This document shows, one piece after another, positions 15,195 through 26,219 of a stretch of 64,000 bases of DNA. The notes beneath the pieces were generated by a model. It saw only the letters and a list, made by a program, of their open reading frames with translations. It was not told the DNA's origin and searched no databases. How positions within the stretch are numbered: the first letter of the stretch is position 1; the number at the start of each line of letters is the position of its first letter. The DNA is from Vitrella brassicaformis CCMP3155. Taxonomy: Eukaryota; Protista; Chromerida. The translations under genes and the position numbers were made by a program. Location: the NCBI GenBank assembly GCA_001179505.1, contig CDMY01000859.1:124001-188000 (forward strand), read 5' to 3'.

Positions 15195-18100
15195 ATGTCC
15201 GTTTGCTCTGAATGGTCAGCAGCATTCGTAGTCATCGGTGGATGCCATTCATCTCATTTGTCTGTTTGATCAGGTCGTCCGAGGACACGGAAGAATGGCT
15301 GCGGTGGAATGGACTGTCAGTCGACTACGTTGCTGCATTCAGAGAGAACCACATACGCGGAGATATATTGGTACGCCTCGAAACAGCCAGACATGCACTC
15401 CCGAAGGCAGATCTATCTCTCGGCTGCTGTGGTCATGCCATAGATGGACCTGACAGCCGCCGACTTGACCGATATGGGACTGGAGGACCACCAGCAGTTC
15501 TTCGCTGCTCGAGCTGCACTCGACTCGTCATCGCCATCCCTCCCGCCTTCATGGCGCATCCGAGCCATCCAGAAGGGCGACGCAGCCACAACCATGCGCC
15601 GCGGCAGCAGAAGAGAAGGGGCCATGGATGTCGTCCTGACACGTTCGGCGCCTCTCATGATGCAGGACAGCGCCGCTGATCGGCATGCGGACCGCTCCAT
15701 CACCCTCATGCCCTGCACCTTAGCGGGTGCCATCCATCATGCGGAGGAGTCTGTGGTGCAGACACTGAGGGGCTCCACGCAGAGGGGCCTGCTGGCAATC
15801 AAGAGGGCTCTGGTATGCAGCGAGGGAGGGAGGGAGGCCAGGGAGATCGACACACTTGCGGTCTGCTATACGCAGGGCACTGTGGAGGATATCGGAACCG
15901 CTGTGGTGCGTGGGTGTCGAGTATGGCACCACACGGGGCCAGCATCGGAGGACGGCCACCTCATCCTGGAGGATCACTCAGGTCACACGATGCAACGCAT
16001 GCCGCCACTCATTGCTGTACTCGTGTGTCGCGGTTCTCGGACACAGGATCTGGCGTGCCTATTGCTCCGTCTTGCGTCGCCGAGCTGCTGCATCGCAGCC
16101 ACCAGCCTGCTGAAGACACGGCAGCATCGGTGTGGCGGTGCGACTGCGTTGTCCTCGTCACCTCAGATGCCCAGGACGCCGGCACCAAAATGTACGCCAA
16201 AGCCATTTAGCGACCAAGTGCATGAGGGGTCGAATATGTAAGGGGCGGTGTGTGTGAGTGTGTGCTTGGTGCAGCTTCGACGCGCTGGTGAGGTCAGATG
16301 CGTCAGTGAGTCCCCCAGGAGTGGTAGCCGTCGAGCTGGAGGGAGAGGATGGCAACGGCAGCGATGAGGCGCTGAGGGCACTTTACACAACTCTCATGGT
16401 GCGTACCCATAGGACACCTATACACACCATGAGCAATCGTGTGTGTCTTTGTGTGTCGGTTATTTGATCCATCCCAGGAAGGCGGCACAGTGGAGGAGGC
16501 GGCGGAATCTGCCCAAGACAAGGCCCCCCACGCCCAGATCTTCACCTTCAGTGCTGCCACCGACTTGGACGCTGACGACGACAGGGCACCGCTGCGGCCT
16601 CTGCTTGTCGACCGCAGGAGGCGGCCACCACAGCTCACCGACCGCATCAATGACACGTACGCAGGGACTGAAATACACTCACATCAGGTCACTCACATCT
16701 ATCGTTCCATGTGTGCATTGCATTAGGACGTCCCCCTACCCGCCCATCGACCTCCCTCCTCTGCCCCATGATGGCTACATGGGCAGCGAGAGAAACGTCT
16801 GGAACGTGCGTAAGAGAGAGAGGTCCACACAGGGCTTGGCTTGTATGTCCGCATGCGCCACCTAACGCTTCTATTCTTCCTCCAGGTGGTCAGGGCGCTG
16901 CGTCGTGTTCGGGCCGTCTGGCTGATGGGCGTCACTGGGGTGGGCAAATCCACCGTTGCGGCCGCTGCTGCACACTACGTCGGATGTCGGTCCCACTACG
17001 CTGATGGCGTGGCTTGGGTGGCCCTGGAAGGATGCCGGGACATGGAATGCGTCACATCCACTCTCGAGCGGGCACTCAAGGTCAGGGTGGTGGATGGTGA
17101 TGGTGTGGATGGCGGGGCGCACCATCCTGTGCCGCATGTCAATGGCCACCGGCTGCTGGTCTTCGACCAAGGTGACAACCGACCTGCCTGCATGTGACGA
17201 ATGCAGGCATCGACGTTGTGTGTGTGTTTTTTGCTGTCAGTCGACGCCCTTCTCTCCCACAGCGGCCCATCTCTGCTCGAATGGCTGTCAAGGCTCATCC
17301 GCACGGCGCCGAGGGTCACAATGATCATCACTGCTCGCCAGGCCATCCCCAGCCACCCATCCTTTGCAGAAGAGACGGAGACCATCGAAATCAGGGGGCT
17401 GTCGAGGACCATTTCTGTCCAGTTCTTGCTCAAGCAGGCCTCCTCCGCCAATCAGGAGATGGCTGAGCAGCTGGCTGGTGAGTGGGGCGGGCACTCAGGG
17501 GGGAGGGAGGGAAGCGATGACAGGTCCAAATTCTTCTCGTCTCTGTTTGTTTATGTGCTGGTGCAGATCTGTGTGGAGGGTTGCCGGCGGCGTTGCGGAT
17601 GGCTGGCAACAGGCTAGGTGAAGGACGTACTCGACGCAAATATGAACAATCCCAATTGCTCCATTTCTTTACTACCTCAGGCGACTTTCGTTCTTCATCC
17701 CTCGCCCCCGTCGCCCTCGCGCCTCCATCCCTCAACAATCACTGGGAGGGTGACCTGTTCGATCGGCTCCTCGGCCCGGCAGTGGACGGCCTCCCATCAG
17801 CGGCACATCGAGCCCTGCGACTTCTGTCGATGCTCCCCGGGCCCTTCTCACTCAATGCAGCGAGTGCCATGTTGGGCTCTCATCCGACGGCCGTTTCCCC
17901 GGTTCTCGCCACTCTGCAGCGAGCGCACCTGCTCACCCGCCACTGTCAGCTCTACACCCTACCGTCCATCGTGAGGCTGCAGCAGGCAGCGTCGCCTCCA
18001 TCCATCGACATCGATACGCGGCGGGGGATGGTGCGTCTCATCGGGTGGTATGCGGGGGTGCTTTTGGACGCCAGCGATCGGCTTGAGCGTGTGAAAGAGG

Positions 18101-20607
18101 GTGGCGGGATGGGTGGCATGACGGCTGACGGGGCTGTGCGGGGGTATGATGAGGAAAGGGTTTGTGTGGATGAGGTGGTGCGGTGGGCGGAGAGGATACA
18201 CCCGGCGGTCTTCCTGCTCATCGTACAGGTACCGCTAGCACACCGGTAGTGGACTCTGCTGTATCTAACGAATGTGTGTTGTGAGTCCCCCTCAGGCGGG
18301 GCGTCCTGTGTTCCTTCATCGTTCGTCCTCGGCTGCGTATGTGGCGCTGTCCGAGTCGGCCCTGACAGCCCTTGTCTCCTTGCAGCACCCCACCGCTTCC
18401 CCGCCCTCCAAGCCACAGCCAGCCCCTTTTATCCACAACAGGCCGATGGACAGGCAGGAGACGACAGACATGGACGGGTTCGTGCCTGTGCTGCTCGACT
18501 CGACGACCACAGCCATCCCCTCGTCACCCCCGTCCCCCTCACTCAACACTTCCCTCGTGTCGCCTGAGTACGATGCGCCGGTGTCGGCCGAGAGCATGGC
18601 GGTTGACCCAGAGGTGATCGCAGAGGAGATGCAGAGCCTGCACAAGATGGTGCAGCAGAGCGCCGCTGGGCTCGACAAGACGGGCGGGCCGTCAGCTACC
18701 ATGGTGCATTTGTCAGTCTTGTCGATGGTGCGCATGATCGAGAGGGCTATGGTGGGGGGAGGAGACAAGTGGGACAAGAACGGCCAGAGCATGCTGCCCC
18801 GGCCGCCGGTGGGTCCGAGACCTCATGTTGGAGGTCGCAAGTGGTGGACTGACCACCCAACAGACGTGCAGGTCAGTGCAACTTGATGGCGTCATCTCTG
18901 CATCGATGGATTCCTCTGTTGTTCCGTGCAGGCTGTGTGTGACATGCTGCTGGATGTTGCCGTTGCGTCGCGAGAGCTGGGTCGCTTCGTGCACGCCGAG
19001 CATCTGTTGATGCACGCCTCACGGCTGCTTGCCACCGTGGCCTTCGACCAGCAGAAGGCAGAACAGAGCGGCGCGTGTCTGCTCATCAGGGGCGAAATAA
19101 CCGCACAGATGGGCCGAGTCAAAGTGATGGAGGTCAGCACAGCACGACACATATCGACAGCTAGAGAGGCCGACAGTCATCTGTTGTCTGTCAGGGTGAC
19201 TCCTCAACTGCTGAGGGGCTCTTCCGGACCGCTGTGGACGTCTTCGCAAGTGGCGCTCCTGACTCCAAGGTGCTTGCCAACGCCATCATGAACCTCGCGA
19301 CGTTCTACACCGACGTACGTTCTGGCAGCCATGCCTGCCCCTCTCCTCATACCCGATGTTTGCGTGTCTGATCGAGTGCAGGTGCGTGTGGACTACCCTT
19401 CAGCAGAGCGTCTGTTCCGCCAGTGTCTGCGGATGCGTCTCCGCCACACGGGGCTTCAGCACCTCGACGCCGCCGCAGTTCTCTCCAATCTGGCCATCCT
19501 CTGCTGCAACACGGGCCGACTCAGAGAGGCGAAAGGGTGAGTGAGCCGGCCTGCAGCAAGCAAAACGTACCTCTCAGCGATTCTTGTCCTCATTGTTTTG
19601 CTTCAGGTATATCCTAGAGTCGGCATCGATCCGGGAGGCGCTTCTCGGCGAGGACGACCTGTTGGTTGCTGCATCCATTCACAACCTGGCGGCCATCTGC
19701 GAAGAGCTGGGCGAGCTCGAGAAGGCAGAGACCCTATACGAGTGAGTGAACTCCCACCGACACAATACCTGCGCACATATGACGACCCCGCCCTGTCTGC
19801 CTTCAGTCGGTGTCTGGCCATCCGCGCGCACCAGCTGCCCGAACACGACCACCGACTGGCCTTCACCCACACCAACATGTCCATACTCTACGCCAAAATG
19901 GGCCGAGGCGACGAGGCAATCGACGCGGCGCGGCAGGCCCTGACCATCGCAGAGGCCTCTCTTGGCCATGACCACCATAAGACGTGCTCTATCCGAGGCA
20001 ATTTGGCGGCTGCACTGGTTCAGAAAGATGAGCGAGATGGAGAGGGTGAGGGGTCTGGCGAGGCCGTGAGGCTTCTGGAGGAATGTTTGGCGTGCCATGA
20101 GAGGAGACAGCGCGGAGGCGATGGGTTGCGGCCTCAGTCGCTCATACCGATCGTCACCAACCTAGGAAAGGTCGTGACCCAGGGGTGAGTGGGTCAACAT
20201 TTTACTTCTTCTGTGTTGTTGTGCAGGCTCGCGAGCAACAAGGCGACTACAAGGGCGGGTACGAGGCCTACGAGTCGGCCTTGGGCATCTGCCGCACCCT
20301 CTACCCGGCGCAGCCCCACCCCCACACCTGCCGGTCTCTTTTCTTCATCGCGAGGTCGGCCTATCGCGCAATGGAGAATGAACAGCAACGCCACGACGCA
20401 TTAGCCGACACGCCACGAGAGCTCTGTGAGTGGCAAGATCCGCTTGCCCCGCGTGTGTTCCCGCCTTCACGAGAGGAGATTGTGGTGTTTGTGAGGGAGT
20501 GCGAGGGCCACCTGAAGGTTCTCGAGGAGAGGGGCGAGTGTGTTCTCGGAGAAGCGGATCGGAAAGTGCTGCACGAGATGAGACAGGGGCTCAGCCTGGC
20601 CTCGTGA
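15195..20607 (+). CDS. NLR-like STAND NTPase: SAM - degenerate CHAT - NB-ARC - winged helix - TPR repeats
   Basis: SAM: MSVCSEW|SSEDTEEWLRWNGLSVDYVAAFRENHIRGDIL|MDLTAADLTDMGL. CHAT-like: GCRVWHHTGPASEDGHLILEDHSG, CDCVVLVTSDA, PGVVAV...ALRALYTTLM|EGGTVEEA. NB-ARC: Walker A GVTGVGKS (16928-16951), Walker B LLVFDQVD, sensor-1 IITAR, LCGGLPAALRMAG. WHD: LRLLSMLPGPFSL...LTR..YTLPSIVR. Kinesin-light-chain-type TPRs: AAVLSNLA, AASIHNLA, AFTHTNMS, TCSIRGNLA. Confidence 0.85.
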
Positions 20608-20915
20608 GCTCATGTTAGTCTGTGTGGAGCTTTTATGAGTTGTCTTTGTACTTATGTGGATGGATGGTTGCTGCAAGATGGCAACGCATTCGATGCAATG
20701 CATGGGTGTGCACTTTTCTTCTCCTCTCCTCAGTCTGGGCGCCTGGCCTGTGAACTGTTCATGGTGCTCGACCATGGCACAAGCCACATGGTCACGCAAC
20801 ATCGACGATACACGGCCACAAGGCACCAGTCAACGCGATGGTGAGACGCTGGCCGCTGCCCTGGCCAATCGCTAGTAGGATCGCCGAATCGCGGCTCCCC
20901 TGACAGGACAGAAAG

Positions 20916-23900
20916 ATGGCCAAGAGCAATGCCAGGAGCTCGTCGTCAAGCGACAGGAGGCCGAACCCCACAAGAAAACACCCCCCCTCAACCTCTTCCA
21001 AGGCTCCCCCTGTTGAGGCTCTCACAACTGAGGGGATGAAACTGGGGGTTGACGTCGAGAAGGAGGCGTGGAGATACCTCTGCCGATGGTACAAGAGCGG
21101 TCTGGACAAGACAGTCAAGGAAATCATCAGAGCCCAGAGCTCAGGCAGCAGCCATCAGCTGGTCCAGCGATATATACGCTTCCTGCTGGCGAGAGGCGGT
21201 GGGGCTTCATTCACCCCTCCCAGGGACGTGTGGCTGGTGTGGCAGAGCCACATGTTGCGGCCTGGCAAGTACGCCTATCATTGCTTGAAGCTGACGGGCA
21301 AGGTGATCTCACACGCGTTCGAACACGATTTGCCTGGGGGAGGGGAGGGGGACGATGACGACGCCAACCGGAAGCTCGACAATGCCGGCAAGCAGACAAA
21401 AGGACGTAGCGACGCTTTTGCTGCGACTTCAAGTTTCTCTGTCATTTTGCGCCTGCAGAGTGCCGCAGTATCGCGGAAGGACTGCAGAAAGTCATCACAG
21501 ATGAGGTGGGACGTACGGATCAGTACACAGCTCACCAATGTTCTCTCTCTCTACTCTGCAGCTCATGGGCATTCTGGCCACCGAAGCCCTCGCCAAGGAC
21601 TGGGCCTTCTTTGACGACCTTCTCACGAACTTCGATAAGTGTGGCATCACCAACATAAGAGGACACGTGACCAGCGATGTGGCGAAGGACTGCCCGGACA
21701 TCGGTTGGCTGATGGAGGGGCTGCATGAGCTGTATCTCAAGTATCTGCAGCTGACCCACAAGTGAGCACAGGAGGGCAGGCAGGGCCACTTTCAGGAATG
21801 GATTCACTTTCGCCGGCCTGTTTGTGCCACAGGTATGGTTCGGACGTGACGCCAACGCTAGAAATTGACTGGCTGTGGCACACACACTTGCTGCACCCGA
21901 CAAGCTACGCCGATGATTGCCAGAAAATGTTCAAAACAAACATAGGTGTGCGAGACACGGCCATTCCTGTCATGTGTGCACTATGCTATTGGGATGTCTG
22001 TCTGCAGGTCATCGCCCCTTCACTGCTGACGACGCCGGTTCCATCCCCGCCAAGCACGCCCTCTCGACCTCTCTCTGGACCAAGCACTGCGGCAACTCTC
22101 CCGCCGAGCTCATCACCCAGCTCATCCGCAAGCACAACAAACGAGAGACCGCAGTGCCAAAGAGAGACGAGGTGGCCCAGCTGGACGCCATGGGCTTCCA
22201 TGACCGAGGCACAAGCCTCCAGGCCCTCGAAGCTACTGATTTTGACGTCAATGGTGCCGCAAATCTGCTGATCGAGTGGCAGAAGGAAGGCCGTACGCCG
22301 CCGACAAGACGAGGCAAGGCAAAGGGGGCATTGAGGGGAACATCGACTGGGAGTGGACACAAGGGAGCCGGTGGGAGTGTCAAGGCGCCTCCGATTGGTG
22401 AGGTGGGTGTCACTCGAAGCGAATACGAGAGACGTCGCGACTACGTGGACTGGGTCGCTGCGCATTCATCGCCCGTACTCGAAATGACGGTGAGACATTG
22501 GCCAAGGCCCCCTGTGCACCTGGCACACCCGCTTCTTTCTGCCCGTTGTTCAGACGTTCCTCAAGTGTCAGAAGTCTGCGGCCAGAATGCTGAATGAGGG
22601 CAGTGGCGAGCCTGTCCAGGGTCTAATGTCGTTGCCTGTGGATGTCATGGTGCGCATTTGGGACTACGTAGCCGAGCCGTCAGCGACCTGCGAAGCTCTC
22701 GGGTGCAAAGTTACGACAAGACAGCGGACGAGGTGAGATGGGTCAGAGCTGCCCGAGATCTAATGTCCGCCTCGTCTACAGAGGGCCTGATGGTTTGATA
22801 ACCAAGACCCCCCGGTGCGGCTGCAGTCGCTGCAAACGACCGTGCGGTCTCTGCGGGGTCGGTTGTATGGGAAGGAGTGTACACACAGTGAAATGTTCCC
22901 TTGTGTCCCATTCAGTATCGTACTCTCCGTCGAGACGAATGGCAAGTTGGCGGCACTATTGCCTACTGCGGCTGTGAGTGTCCTGAATGCCGCCAGCTGC
23001 TGGTGCGAGAGGAGATACCAGGGGGGTTGGCGCTCGCTTGCGGCTGTGAGGGCAGCGTGTGTCAGTGCGGCAGGAAGGTCGACAGACAGAGACGGGAGAT
23101 GCCTGGCCCTGACCATCGCGGCAAACTCATGTGGTGAGTGGTCTCCAGGAGACAGACAGAAGAAATGAGGGGGCTTCTGTATGATAATCTTTTGCGCGTG
23201 TTCTCAGGTGGTGCGGCACATGTGGTTGTGCCAAGTGCGGGAAGCTGCCTTCTACATGCAAGTGCGACGAGGACCGCTGCTGTCGCTGTTGCAGCTGCTT
23301 TCTACCAAAGGCAGTGGTCACTAAGCTCCAGAAGATGCACACGCAACCAAACACCTCCTCGTTCATCTGCAGGTCCGCACTCAGGACGGCCTCCGAATTC
23401 CTTTCTCGTCATTGAAGGAGGGAGAATTCATCGCCACAGGGCAGAGTCCATCGTCGCCTCCCATCAGCGGCTCGTTCGGCTGTCAAGCGGCCTACCGTCG
23501 TGTCACCAAGGTGTGGAAATGCCCGGTGCCTGGAGGACGCGTGGACAGCTACTGGAGGGGGCCGAGTGGTGGAGGTGTGACCACCGGGCACCCCGTATGG
23601 GACCAAGAGCAATGGCGTCGACCTGAAGAGGTGCATGAGACCAAAGCCACACATGTGTGTGTGTGTGCGCATGGTTGTCCATGTCTCTGTCTCTCTTTGA
23701 CTGCATGCAGTTGGTGGCCGACGGTCTTTGGCGGGTGGAGACACAGCCAGTGGATTTCGTCTACACGATCGAGTTGGAGGGCCATGAAGACACCGTTGAA
23801 GTGGGCGGGGTGGTGTGTGCTGCCCTGGGAGCCTACTGCGGGCCTTCATTCGGCTGGAACATCTTCACGCGCAAGACGCAGCGCTGCGACAAAAGCGACT

Positions 23901-24040
23901 GTCTCCTGTGTGACCAAGTCGTGCTGCTGAAACAAGCGAGTGTGGACTTCGCCCACATCGGTGAGGATGCCCTTGCCGTGAGATACCCCCCGGTTGTCAT
24001 GAAGGTCGGCAGGCGGCAGTGTTCGTGGATGGCAAAGTGA
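20916..24040 (+). CDS. Multidomain protein: 2x DUF1399 (GRDP-like) - UBA - F-box-like helix - Cys-rich region - C-terminal Hint (Vint-type) domain
   Basis: DUF1399 repeats PPRDVWLVWQSHMLRPGKY and PTLEIDWLWHTHLLHPTSY. UBA: EVAQLDAMGFHDRGTSLQALEATDFDVNGAANLL. Intron 22490-22553 joins in frame to LMSLPVDVMVRIWDYV. Introns 22733-22781, 22858-22915, 23134-23207 and ~23317-23372 keep frame through a Cys-rich block into SCFLPKAVVRTQDGLRIPFSSLKEGEFIAT...VTTGHPVW...W..P...VYTIELEGH...GGVVCAALG. Confidence 0.8.
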
Positions 24041-24388
24041 CAGAGGTTTCTCGTGGGATGGCAAGGAGAGAGAGTTTTGGCGATGCGATGGGGGTCAGGG
24101 TCGGGCGCAGTGAAGTGACCTTCAGTAGTTCTGTTTAAGAGACATCAATGCAGGATCCGTGACTGGAATAAATTGGTCAAGCGGATTGTGGCCAGACAGA
24201 TACGTCAGGATATAAAAGGCAGACAGCAATGAAGCTCAAACCCCCAACCCCCAGCCCCTCCTGAGACACGCACACTGACTAGACGAACTGTGTGTGTGTT
24301 GTGTGTGCGGCGACTCTCTTTCCCCTTCTTCTCACTCATAGGAGCGGCAGCATCCTTCTCTCGCTCAATCACGACAACAGCAGCTAAC

Positions 24389-26219
24389 TTAGGCAAGTAG
24401 GCCCTTGATGAAGGCCGCCGCCTGGTGCCCCGCGTCACATGCATATGCATAGCCCATCCGGGCCCCCCTCACCACCCGCCTCGCCATCTCTACACAGCAG
24501 CACCCATCCTCCTCGTCACGCCCCTCCCAACTGACCAGCCACGAGTTCCCCTGCCTCTGCCAGTAGGCCACCTCCCACTTAGTCAGCTTGCTCACATACA
24601 AGCCGTCCTCGCCCCCACCCCACAGCGACCGGCACCTCCAGGAGGGGGAGGGAGGGGGAGGGCACCGTGTGTGTGGTGGTGGGCGGCCAGCTGGGCGGCC
24701 CGTACGCCATCGAGTGTGTGTGGACGGCGGCGTAGGTGGGGGGTAACACTATGTGGCGGCTGGTGTGGGTGTGGGGGCTCGCGGGCTTCTGTGGCAGTGC
24801 GACCGGCGCCACACACGGGGAGGTCATCTGACCCGGCAGAAGGGACGGGCGCAGCGGTCTCGCCGTTGCCGGTGTGTGTCTGCTGCTGTGTGTTGGTCTT
24901 GAGTGTGGGTGTGGAGGGTGCGGCGGCTGGTCCACCGGGGTTGTGGGCTGTGACCTTGGGTGAGGTGGCAGTGCGAAGGGGCATCGGTGGGGGCGTGCTG
25001 CTGTGCGGCTGGTGCTGGTGCTGTGGGTGGTGTGTGGGGCCGGGGGAGGCCGACGGTGACACGGCGGGCCCTGGGAGGGAGAGGGGGGAGCTGGGTGGGT
25101 GTGAGGGCTCCTGCTGGTCGTGGTCGCCGTCGTAGAGGGGCGCGGGGAGGGCGGGCGACAGGGGCGGGGTGGGTATCTCGGCCGCAGCAGCGGCGGCTTC
25201 CAGCACGGCGGCTGGGATCTCTTGGTCCTCCTTCAGGAACCAATTCTTGACTACCGCCTGCATGAATGTCGGCAGACAAAGACAGACAGACAGACAGATA
25301 TGTGGAGAAGAATGGATGTATGGTGCGTATGTGTACGGGTGTATGTGTCATTCCTTTACTGATTTGAGGCAGTCTGCACTTACCGGCATGCCCTCGGTGA
25401 CCTCTCTCCGCCACAAGAAGATGGCCTTGTGGTGGTACTCCTCACACACGCCCTGCAGGACGGATGCATCAATCACGACCACACAGCATACGCAGACACG
25501 CCAGACCAAAAAGCTGAATGGACACAGGTCGTGTACTTAACTGACTAACGGTGCCCACTTACTTACCAGCTCCTCGTCGTATTCCCGCCGCCTCTCCTCG
25601 TCCAGGAGGACATCCCTGGCCTGCTTGATGTAATCAAACATGTAGCCGTCCTTCAAGAAACCCCTATCAGGATGAGCCTGCATCGAATGCAATTAATGAC
25701 AGCACACCCATTGCAATACAACACACCGACCGATGCATACGCACGGCTCACATCATCCCTCCAGCATGCAATGCATCGCTCCGCGTACCCAGAAGGCTGC
25801 TTTCTTGTACGCCGCCTTGATCTCCTCCCTACTCGCAAAGGGCGACACGCCCAACACCACATAGTGGCCAAGGAGGAAGGGACCGAGCCGACCTGCACAC
25901 ACACAACACTCACAGAAAAATATCTCACAGGTACATTGCGTGTAAGGTCTCTATGTTTCCCTTTGTCTGTTTCCTCTGTCTGTTTCCCTCTGTCTGTTTC
26001 CCTCTGTCTGTTTCCCTCTGTCTGTTTCCCTCTGTCTGTTTCCCTTTGTCTGTCTGTTTGTCAGTCTGTTTGTATACGTACTTGTATCATCCTCGTAGTC
26101 GGCCCACCGCGGCTTCTCCTTCCTCTCGACCTCCTGTGCGGCACTTCGTCGATCTCGGTGGCCGCCGAAGCGGCCAAATATGCGGAGACAAAAATTGAGA
26201 AGAGAAGGAGACATGGCAT
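24389..26219 (-). CDS. J-domain (DnaJ type III) protein with N-terminal signal peptide and Pro-rich tail; 3' exon structure uncertain
   Basis: MPCLLLFSIFVSAYLAASAA (signal-like). J domain HYVVLGVSPFASREEIKAAYKKAAFW|AHPDRGF...FDYIKQARDVLLDEERRREYD (about 25565-25870) with intact HPD. A Pro/Ala/His-rich low-complexity exon follows. Confidence 0.7.
25953..26050. repeat. Intronic 14-bp minisatellite (TGTTTCCCTCTGTC)n, about 6-7 copies with variants
   Basis: Directly visible tandem array inside an intron of the J-domain gene. Confidence 0.9.

What the first reader, a model, noticed from the sequence alone, without database searches (positions are those of the whole stretch)
20916..24040. Putative self-cleaving Hint(Vint)-domain protein with a new domain combination: DUF1399x2 - UBA - F-box-like - Cys-rich - Hint
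In-frame introns join what the ORF track shows as several separate ORFs into one polypeptide. It ends in a Hint domain with Cys1 in S|CF (TGC 23296-23298) and an intact block-B TxxH (TTGH, 23580-23591). Vint-type motifs HPVW...W..P and VYTIEL...GGVVCAALG are also present (seen). Cys1 plus TxxH drive the N-S acyl shift in Hedgehog and inteins (established). Predicted outcome: autoproteolysis, or ligation of a nucleophile to an N-terminal UBA/F-box/Zn-rich module, i.e. an autoprocessed ubiquitin-system adaptor. Vint domains normally follow VWA domains, so this context looks new (inference).
Basis: partly seen in the sequence, partly recalled or inferred. Interest (0 to 1): 0.85.

Follow-up and report, generated by a model that had tools for sequence, protein, structure and literature searches.

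The report
Vint-type self-cleaving domain on GRDP–UBA protein
An expressed 11-exon gene of the alga Vitrella brassicaformis ends in a genuine Vint-type Hint (hedgehog/intein-like) self-processing domain, but the one short intron that would join it to its GRDP–UBA front half stays unspliced in the RNA available, so the single fused protein is not yet shown in this species.

Summary
The C-terminal Hint domain is real. A profile of 32 relatives hits the solved Tetrahymena Vint domain (8R2C, E 2.5e-11). An AlphaFold model (pLDDT 86) matches 8R2C at Z 16.9, and its Cys lies on catalytic residue 1 of inteins and Cys258 of Hedgehog.

An mRNA-like contig confirms nine introns, including 23317-23372. 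It does not remove the 49-nt intron 22733-22781, which alone links the GRDP-UBA half to the Cys-rich/Hint half. Retained, it gives a TGA stop (22734-36), with an ATG at 22738: two ORFs of 498 and 344 aa.

The Chromera velia orthologue (one ORF on a transcript) and a third relative are continuous across this junction. I therefore take the fused 827-aa protein to be ancestral and probably made from a spliced minority isoform.

"DUF1399 x2" is one bipartite GRDP-like domain. UBA is likely. F-box is unsupported.

The gene is already deposited (CEM35630.1, mis-modelled). At least 60 relatives, from dinoflagellates, chromerids, a pelagophyte and unnamed marine samples, carry this Vint subtype behind UBL, adenylate-kinase, TPR or GRDP modules, never VWA among the 20 scanned. 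It is a new variant of a known kind. Self-cleavage is inferred, not shown.

The parts
20877..20915 (+). 5' UTR as far as the mRNA-like contig reaches
   Evidence: The X5 contig starts at 20877. An in-frame stop lies upstream of the ATG.
20916..21387 (+). Exon 1: start codon and first half of the GRDP-like domain (motif RDVWLVWQSHMLRPGKY)
   Evidence: Weak Pfam GRDP-like hit on this exon alone, E 0.028.
21388..21458 (+). Intron 1, GC-AG, 71 nt, spliced
   Evidence: Joint 21386>21458 in the X5 contig, with 1 nt of ambiguity.
21459..22489 (+). Exons 2-5 (21459-21505, 21562-21761, 21833-21945, 22008-22489), with spliced introns 21506-21561, 21762-21832 and 21946-22007. They encode the second half of the GRDP-like domain (EIDWLWHTHLLHPTSY, 21834-21944) and the UBA domain (about 22169-22270).
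   Evidence: Joints. Pfam GRDP-like 42 bits, E 2e-10, on P0001. UBA: Pfam 18.2 bits; ubiquilin UBA structures at E 3e-4.
22490..22553 (+). Intron 5, GT-AG, 64 nt, spliced in two runs from different studies
   Evidence: The joint is seen in X5 and in X1.
22554..22732 (+).
   Evidence: No Pfam hit at E<=1. F-box clusters appear only at ranks 21 and 27, scores 0.81 and 0.78. The stretch aligns with Chromera and P0016.
22733..22781 (+). Candidate intron 6 (49 nt, GTGAGA...CTACAG), RETAINED in the RNA contigs. Retention gives stop TGA at 22734-22736 and an ATG at 22738-22740 that opens the downstream frame.
   Evidence: The X5 contig is contiguous over 22553-22856, and the X1 contig over 22553-22742. 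Removing the intron restores a frame whose product aligns across the junction with two relatives.
22782..23295 (+). Cys-rich region with four C-G-C-x(2-4)-C-x(1-2)-C repeats, in exons 7-9 (22782-22857, 22916-23133, 23208-23295). Introns 22858-22915 and 23134-23207 are spliced.
   Evidence: Joints. No Pfam family. The repeats are conserved in Chromera P0022 and in P0016.
23296..23298 (+). Cys1 codon (TGC) of the Hint/Vint domain. The predicted scissile bond is Ser625-Cys626 of the 827-aa model.
   Evidence: Cys is present in all 23 correctly aligned sequences that cover the column. Model residue 8 superposes on residue 1 of inteins and Cys258 of Hedgehog.
23296..24010 (+). Vint-type Hint domain including its C-terminal extension (end of exon 9, then exons 10 and 11). 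Introns 23317-23372 and 23631-23710 are spliced.
   Evidence: Profile against 8R2C, E 2.5e-11. AF2 model pLDDT 86.4. Foldseek to 8R2C, E 6e-8. VIA Z 16.9 with 152 residues aligned. Pfam Vint 18.7 bits, below the cut-off of 27. Joints.
23580..23591 (+). Block B motif T-T-G-H (Thr702 and His705 of the 827-aa model), followed by Pro
   Evidence: T84, H87 and P88 are invariant in alignment A1.
24038..24040 (+). Stop codon. The 3' UTR continues at least to 24300.

Best explanation
This is one nuclear gene of Vitrella brassicaformis (public protein CEM35630.1). Its ancestral and probably still functional product is an 827-aa protein with no evident signal peptide (by eye, no predictor run), so probably cytosolic. 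The order of modules is: one bipartite all-alpha GRDP-like domain, a UBA domain, a linker, a Cys-rich region with four CGC-type repeats, and a C-terminal Vint-type Hint domain.

By homology, the Vint domain performs an N-to-S acyl shift at Ser625-Cys626. Thr702 and His705 (block B) would assist. This turns the peptide bond into a thioester, which is then resolved by water or by an unknown nucleophile. That would release a 625-aa GRDP-UBA-Cys-rich fragment from a 202-aa Vint fragment.

Making the fused precursor requires removal of a 49-nt intron (22733-22781). The RNA assemblies at hand retain it, so the dominant message encodes only the 498-aa Hint-less front half. Intron retention would therefore set how much self-processing precursor is made.

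Shown: nine splices, the retention, the Vint fold and its conserved residues, and fused orthologues. Inferred: splicing of the 49-nt intron in some transcripts, the cleavage chemistry, and the fate of the thioester.
For: Gene model and expression: a 3413-nt spliced contig carries nine joints.

Fusion is ancestral: Chromera velia Cvel_23483 (927 aa) is one uninterrupted ORF (165-2948) on a 3226-nt transcript contig. It and P0016 (1055 aa) align with both sides of the 22733-22781 junction. Only removal of these 49 nt (frame shift +1) joins the two homologous frames. The intron has a consensus GTGAG donor and a YAG acceptor like its neighbours.

Vint identity: the family profile hits 8R2C at E 2.5e-11. 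VIA gives Z 16.9, rmsd 2.8 A, 152 of 169 residues, well above BIL2 (11.6), inteins (about 11) and Hedgehog (11.1). Relatives score 28-55 bits against Pfam Vint, above its cut-off. Language-model features of exon 11 point to Vint at 0.96.

Catalytic residues: Cys1 and T..HP are conserved across the family.
Against: No RNA evidence shows the 49-nt intron spliced. Two contigs from two studies read through its donor. 49 nt is shorter than all nine confirmed introns (56-80 nt).

The retained form has a premature stop followed by four splice junctions, yet it is the assembled (dominant) path.

This protein's own Pfam Vint score is below threshold (18.7 against 27).

No cleavage assay of any Vint domain was found in the library, so the chemistry is transferred from Hedgehog, inteins and BIL.
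Confidence: 0.6

Rival explanations
1. In Vitrella the gene has effectively split. The mRNA is read as observed, with the 49 nt retained. It yields a 498-aa GRDP-UBA protein that ends at TGA 22734-36. The 344-aa Cys-rich+Vint ORF, which starts one base later at ATG 22738, is either made by termination-reinitiation or not translated at all.
For: Both RNA contigs that cover the site retain the 49 nt. The stop and the next in-frame ATG are separated by one base, TGAgATG. ORF-B is fully open and keeps all conserved Vint residues.
Against: Reinitiation after a 498-codon ORF is very inefficient in eukaryotes (established knowledge). Orthologues are single ORFs across this point. The 49 nt carry perfect splice signals, and their removal restores exactly the homologous frame. 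Assemblies keep only the dominant path, so a spliced minority would not be seen (tool note).
Confidence: 0.25
2. The Vint domain is a non-catalytic Hint fold kept as a structural or binding module, so no cleavage occurs even in the fused protein.
For: The protein's own Pfam Vint score is sub-threshold. Some family-consensus positions differ in Vitrella: GGG-V-T instead of G-C-x-L-T before block B, HEDT instead of HVDT, and Ala instead of Cys/Ser at +5. No biochemical proof of Vint cleavage was found.
Against: Cys1, Thr and His of block B, and the ELEGH.DT motif are all retained. The modelled Cys superposes on the catalytic residue 1 of active inteins and on Hedgehog Cys258. Strict family-wide conservation of Cys1 is hard to explain without chemistry.
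Confidence: 0.15

Closest known systems
Vint domain of VWA-Vwaint-Vint proteins (Burglin 2008, PMC2362128; crystal structure 8R2C, Tetrahymena thermophila; Pfam PF14623)
   Same: Hint fold with motif A (Cys1) and motif B (TxxH), followed by HP..W..P. The C-terminal extension is also shared: 152 of 169 residues superpose, Z 16.9. The family profile hits 8R2C at E 2.5e-11. Like Vint proteins, it has no evident signal peptide. Some Vint proteins also carry ubiquitin-system domains, such as a U-box upstream of VWA (PMC2362128).
   Different: No VWA or Vwaint domain. The front end is GRDP-like + UBA + Cys-rich repeats. The subfamily has its own strongly conserved signature (ELEGHVDT, YCGxxFGWNxFTRKT, CxxC, terminal Y-P-Y). 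This protein scores below Pfam's Vint cut-off.
BIL2 domain of the Tetrahymena BUBL1 polyubiquitin-like locus (6Y75/6TMM)
   Same: An alveolate Hint-fold domain, second-best structural match (Z 11.6). BIL2 transfers the upstream ubiquitin-like domain to lysines without ATP (PMC8616854). At least six of the 20 scanned relatives of the Vitrella domain have a ubiquitin-like domain upstream of Cys1.
   Different: BIL2 sits between two UBL domains and has a C-terminal Asn for splicing. The Vitrella domain is at the protein's C-terminus, has no C-extein, and has no UBL in this protein.
Hedgehog C-terminal autoprocessing (Hog) domain (1AT0)
   Same: A C-terminal Hint domain that cleaves off and modifies the N-terminal part through a Cys1 thioester. 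Structural match Z 11.1, with Cys258 on the model's Cys.
   Different: No Pfam Hint/Hog hit, no evident signal peptide, and no sterol-recognition region. The C-terminal extension is of Vint type.
Plant GRDP1/GRDP2 (DUF1399, Pfam PF07173)
   Same: The front domain scores 42 bits against PF07173. It superposes on ESM-Atlas GRDP clusters at TM 0.68-0.72 over about 220-235 residues.
   Different: The plant proteins have glycine-rich tails and C2/GRDP_C domains and no Hint domain. Their biochemical function is unknown (PMC4299439, PMC8585784).

Membership tests
Hint superfamily (fold) | Hint beta-fold with the N-terminal nucleophile at structural position 1 | tested here: met
   AF2 model pLDDT 86.4, pTM 0.84. 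25 PDB Hint-fold matches at E<=1e-3. 73 chains at Z>=8, with model residue 8 (Cys) aligned to residue 1 of inteins and Cys258 of Hedgehog.
Hint superfamily (catalytic motifs) | Cys/Ser at position 1 and block B TxxH | tested here: met
   TGC 23296-98 and TTGH 23580-91. T84 and H87 are invariant, and Cys1 is present in every correctly aligned sequence that covers the column.
Vint (Pfam PF14623) | Score at or above Pfam's gathering cut-off (27 bits) | tested here: not met
   P0001 scores 18.7 bits, E 0.0016. Single exons give no hit. Of the 20 proteins scanned (this protein included), 11 pass at 28.3-54.7 bits.
Vint (structure and profile) | Closest solved relative is the Vint domain, including its C-terminal extension | tested here: met
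   Profile A1 against 8R2C, E 2.5e-11. VIA Z 16.9 against at most 11.6 for any other Hint type, with model residues 6-190 aligned.
VWA-Vint gene family (Burglin 2008) | VWA and Vwaint domains upstream of Vint | tested here: not met
   No VWA hit in P0001 or in any of the 19 relatives scanned.
Intein / BIL | C-terminal Asn plus a downstream nucleophile and a C-extein to ligate | tested here: not met
   The domain ends the protein. The only conserved Asn (GWN) is followed by I/V-F and is lost in a subgroup.
Hedgehog Hog domain (Pfam PF01079) | Pfam Hint/Hog profile match, signal peptide, sterol-recognition region | tested here: not met
   No PF01079 hit for P0001. The N-terminus is polar with no hydrophobic leader (inspected by eye only, no predictor run).
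Self-cleaving activity | Thiol- or hydroxylamine-inducible cleavage abolished by a Cys1 mutation | not testable with these tools
   Needs a bench assay. No published Vint cleavage assay was found.
GRDP-like (Pfam PF07173) | Score above the gathering cut-off (22.7) and the GRDP fold | tested here: met
   42 bits, E 2e-10. TM 0.68-0.72 to four GRDP clusters. It is one bipartite domain, not two.
UBA | Pfam UBA at or above 22.4 bits, or a match to solved UBA domains | tested here: inconclusive
   Pfam 18.2 and 15.2 bits, below the cut-off. Ubiquilin-1/2/4 UBA structures at E 3e-4 to 7e-4 over the whole UBA. UniProt names the protein a UBA domain protein.
F-box | F-box or F-box-like profile match of about 45 residues | tested here: not met
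   No Pfam hit at E<=1 on exon 6. Only rank-21 and rank-27 feature hits at 0.81 and 0.78. The motif runs straight into a Cys motif after about 25 residues.

The most novel reading that the evidence does not exclude
The Vint subfamily found in dinoflagellates, chromerids and a pelagophyte may be an ATP- and E1-independent protein-conjugation device. The Cys1 thioester would not simply be hydrolysed. It would pass the upstream module (a ubiquitin-like domain in many members; the GRDP-UBA-Cys-rich module in Vitrella and Chromera) onto a lysine or another nucleophile of a target, as BIL2 of Tetrahymena does with ubl4. In Vitrella, retention of the 49-nt intron would act as the on/off switch for making the reactive precursor.
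Probability: 0.15. Interest if true: 0.8.

Novelty: new variant of a known kind. Interest (0 to 1): 0.5.

Why it matters
In the literature searched, Vint is the least studied of the three eukaryotic Hint lineages. It is described only behind VWA domains, and I found no published activity assay.

This locus leads to a well-conserved Vint subfamily with at least 60 clusters at 50% identity. Named members come from dinoflagellates, chromerids and a pelagophyte. The domain is attached to very different front ends: ubiquitin-like, adenylate kinase, TPR and GRDP-like.

That modularity is what one expects of a general self-cleaving or self-ligating cassette. The frequent UBL and UBA neighbours, and the rotifer F-box+GRDP proteins, tie both Vint and the unexplained GRDP domain to ubiquitin-type biology.

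The locus also gives a concrete, testable case of a very short retained intron that decides whether a self-processing domain is attached to its cargo. For this single gene, however, the find is an incremental extension of a known domain family that is already present, unstudied, in public databases.

Tried and rejected
(1) My first splice model used 21406-21458 and a 37-nt intron at 22879-22915. The RNA contig showed 21388-21458 (GC-AG) and 22858-22915 instead.

(2) Pfam on single exons found no Hint or Vint family, because the domain is split over three exons. It was detected only on the deposited full protein and on relatives.

(3) I looked for independent RNA support for or against splicing of 22733-22781. 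Two exact-word scans of metagenome contigs with exon 7 and exon 6 words gave 0 hits. No Vitrella transcript-derived ORF (498, 344 or 827 aa) is in the protein collection.

(4) The word-indexed homologue search was nearly blind for this family, with 2, 1 and 7 hits. The exhaustive HMMER search with exon 11 was what opened the family.

(5) GRDP fold against solved structures: Foldseek found nothing at E<1. The best VIA Z was 4.7, to a helical part of bacterial OTU deubiquitinases. That is below the noise level for helical proteins and is not used.

(6) Intein, Hog and F-box memberships were rejected (see the membership table).

(7) No paralogue of the Hint or GRDP part lies elsewhere in the 64-kb window.

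(8) Literature searches for Vint biochemistry or non-VWA Vint proteins returned only Burglin 2008 and unrelated papers.

(9) The spliced 827-aa protein has no stored reference, so it was analysed only inside scripts. It was not submitted to the search or fold tools. P0001 and exon references were used instead.
Full report
**What is at the coordinates.** The window is eukaryotic, about 58% G+C with short introns. The deposited protein that matches the region is CEM35630.1 / UniProt A0A0G4GXC1, 'UBA domain-containing protein' of Vitrella brassicaformis CCMP3155 (P0001, 774 aa). ATG is at 20916. The Ser-Cys-Phe has TGC at 23296-23298. ACC-ACC-GGG-CAC (TTGH) is at 23580-23591. HPVW, VYTIELEGH and GGVVCAALG lie downstream, and the stop is at 24038-24040.

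**Transcript evidence.** Contigs of four public runs were laid on 20700-24300. X2 and X6 are colinear with the genome (DNA-like; X2 may be the source assembly). Run X5 comes from the same sample. It holds a 3413-nt contig that starts at 20877 and skips nine segments with intron ends:
- 21388-21458 (GC-AG)
- 21506-21561
- 21762-21832
- 21946-22007
- 22490-22553
- 22858-22915
- 23134-23207
- 23317-23372
- 23631-23710

These were rebuilt. The 22490-22553 joint also occurs in a contig of run X1, from another study. The gene is therefore expressed and multi-exonic. Two of my own first boundary guesses were wrong and were corrected by this contig.

**The weak point.** Joining the front half (frame A) to the Cys-rich/Hint half (frame B) needs a tenth intron, 22733-22781. 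It is 49 nt long, with GTGAGA at one end and CTACAG at the other. The X5 contig is continuous from 22553 to 22856. The X1 contig reads from 22553 to 22742, past the donor.

With the 49 nt retained, the first ORF ends at TGA 22734-36 (498 aa). A second ORF of 344 aa begins at ATG 22738. With the 49 nt removed, one ORF of 827 aa results. The deposited model avoids the stop by jumping from 22650 to 22915. The RNA contig contradicts that jump, which costs the deposited model 53 residues.

**Comparative evidence favours the fused form as the ancestral design.**
- Chromera velia Cvel_23483 (P0022, 927 aa) is a single ORF (165-2948) on a 3226-nt transcript contig.
- P0016 (1055 aa, EukProt) has the same order of modules.
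- Both align with the Vitrella sequence on each side of the junction: the C-x2-C/TSRR-type stretch before it and the CGC repeats after it.
- Only a +1 frame change within about 22725-22790 can join these homologous frames, and the 49-nt intron provides exactly that.

Assemblies keep the dominant path, so a spliced minority could not be seen. I could not get further RNA evidence. I put the probability that the fused precursor is made in Vitrella at roughly 0.6-0.7.

**The Hint domain is real and of the Vint type.** An exhaustive HMMER search with exon 11 alone found 60 cluster representatives at E<=1e-3. An alignment of 32 domain sequences (A1) has Cys1 in every correctly aligned sequence that covers the column. 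Its invariant positions are W62, T84, H87, P88, W95, E121, G124, H125 and D127.

The supporting results are:
- The A1 profile hits one solved structure strongly: 8R2C, the Vint domain of Tetrahymena thermophila, at E 2.5e-11. The next sequence hits are inteins and are not significant (E 0.13-0.23).
- AlphaFold2 on A1 gives pLDDT 86.4 and pTM 0.84.
- Foldseek ranks 8R2C first (E 6e-8), then BIL2 of the Tetrahymena BUBL1 locus, Hedgehog 1AT0/6TYY and many inteins.
- VIA-align gives Z 16.9 (rmsd 2.8 A, 152 residues, model residues 6-190) for 8R2C, against at most 11.6 for all others. The conserved C-terminal extension therefore also belongs to the Vint architecture.
- The model's Cys (residue 8) lies on residue 1 of inteins and on Cys258 of Hedgehog.
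- Pfam Vint scores this protein at only 18.7 bits (cut-off 27). Eleven of the 20 proteins scanned pass at 28-55 bits.
- Language-model features agree: exon 11 points to Vint at 0.96, and exon 10 to Hint-clan families at 0.84-0.89.

**The family.** Named members come from Symbiodinium species, other dinoflagellates (MGD, TGD, Yihiella), Chromera, Vitrella and the pelagophyte Aureococcus. The rest are marine transcript or metagenome contigs without a named organism. None of the 20 proteins scanned has VWA. The front ends seen are:
- ubiquitin-like domain plus Pro-rich linker (P0010, P0056, P0063 and others)
- adenylate kinase (P0015, P0023)
- TPR (P0031)
- adenylate kinase-GRDP-(UBL region, read by eye)-Vint (P0025) and GRDP-UBL-Vint (P0018, ubiquitin only E 0.096) in Symbiodinium
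- GRDP-NIF phosphatase-Cys-rich-Vint (P0016)
- GRDP-Cys-rich-Vint (Chromera)

GRDP and Vint thus co-occur in several independent layouts.

**Front modules.** Residues 40-300 fold as one all-alpha domain (pLDDT 72.5, but the five models vary from 39 to 72). The domain superposes on four ESM-Atlas GRDP clusters at TM 0.68-0.72. One of these is a rotifer cluster that combines F-box with GRDP. The two W-x-W-H/Q-x-H-x-L-x-P-x-x-Y motifs are the two halves of this one domain. No solved structure resembles it.

UBA is probable: it is sub-threshold in Pfam, but ubiquilin UBA structures match at E about 3e-4. F-box is not supported. The CGC repeats match no known family.

**Mechanism.** What follows is inference from the established chemistry of Hedgehog, inteins and BIL domains. 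Cys626 attacks the Ser625 carbonyl, assisted by Thr702 and His705. The resulting thioester is resolved by water or by another nucleophile. The domain is C-terminal and lacks an intein-type Asn/+1 pair, so splicing is excluded and N-terminal cleavage or transfer remains.

BIL2 of Tetrahymena transfers its upstream UBL to lysines without ATP (PMC8616854). The many UBL-Vint relatives make a similar transfer conceivable, but nothing here tests it.

Cys at -2 co-occurs with Cys at +5 in the family. This hints at a disulfide or metal site around the scissile bond. Vitrella has Cys at -2 and -3 but Ala at +5.

**Verdict.** This is a new architectural variant of a known domain kind. It is already in the databases under automatic names, and it is not described in the literature I could search. 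Interest is moderate.

Noticed in passing
window 22650-22915: The deposited gene model (CEM35630.1, 774 aa) uses a donor at 22650 and the acceptor at 22915. This removes the end of exon 6 and all of exon 7 (53 aa). The RNA contig is contiguous over 22553-22856, so the public model is wrong here, probably to avoid the stop in the retained 49-nt intron.
   Followed up: yes
window 21388-21458: Intron 1 has a GC donor (GCAAGC...CAG), a non-canonical GC-AG intron confirmed by the RNA contig. My GT-based model had placed the donor 18 nt downstream.
   Followed up: yes
alignment A1, positions -2 and +5 around Cys1 (window 23290-23313): Across the family, Cys at -2 (C-x-|C-F) co-occurs with Cys at +5 (CFTxxC). 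Members without Cys at -2 mostly have Ser at +5. This suggests a disulfide or metal pair next to the scissile bond, possibly a redox or zinc switch as in some inteins. Vitrella and Chromera have Cys at -2 and -3 but not at +5.
   Followed up: partly
window 21033-22075 (GRDP-like domain): The GRDP-like (DUF1399) domain models as a two-half all-alpha fold with no solved structural relative. Its nearest predicted-structure clusters include rotifer F-box+GRDP proteins and a bacterial half-size family (UCP032817-like, PF27765). The best PDB alignment (Z 4.7) is to the helical part of bacterial OTU deubiquitinases, which is not significant.
   Followed up: partly
window 24041-24300 and beyond: The mRNA-like contig (3413 nt) runs about 580 nt past 24300. 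This implies a 3' UTR of up to about 840 nt, or overlap with a convergent neighbour in the Pro-rich, G+C-rich region 24400-25400.
   Followed up: no
window 23654-23671: A (TG)n microsatellite lies inside intron 10. A second X2 contig matched only this repeat.
   Followed up: no
window 15195-20607: The upstream neighbour on the + strand has TPR-like ORFs (19541-20607). Another first-stage note describes it as an NLR-like gene. A separate X5 contig covers 20700 to about 20876, so it is also transcribed.
   Followed up: no
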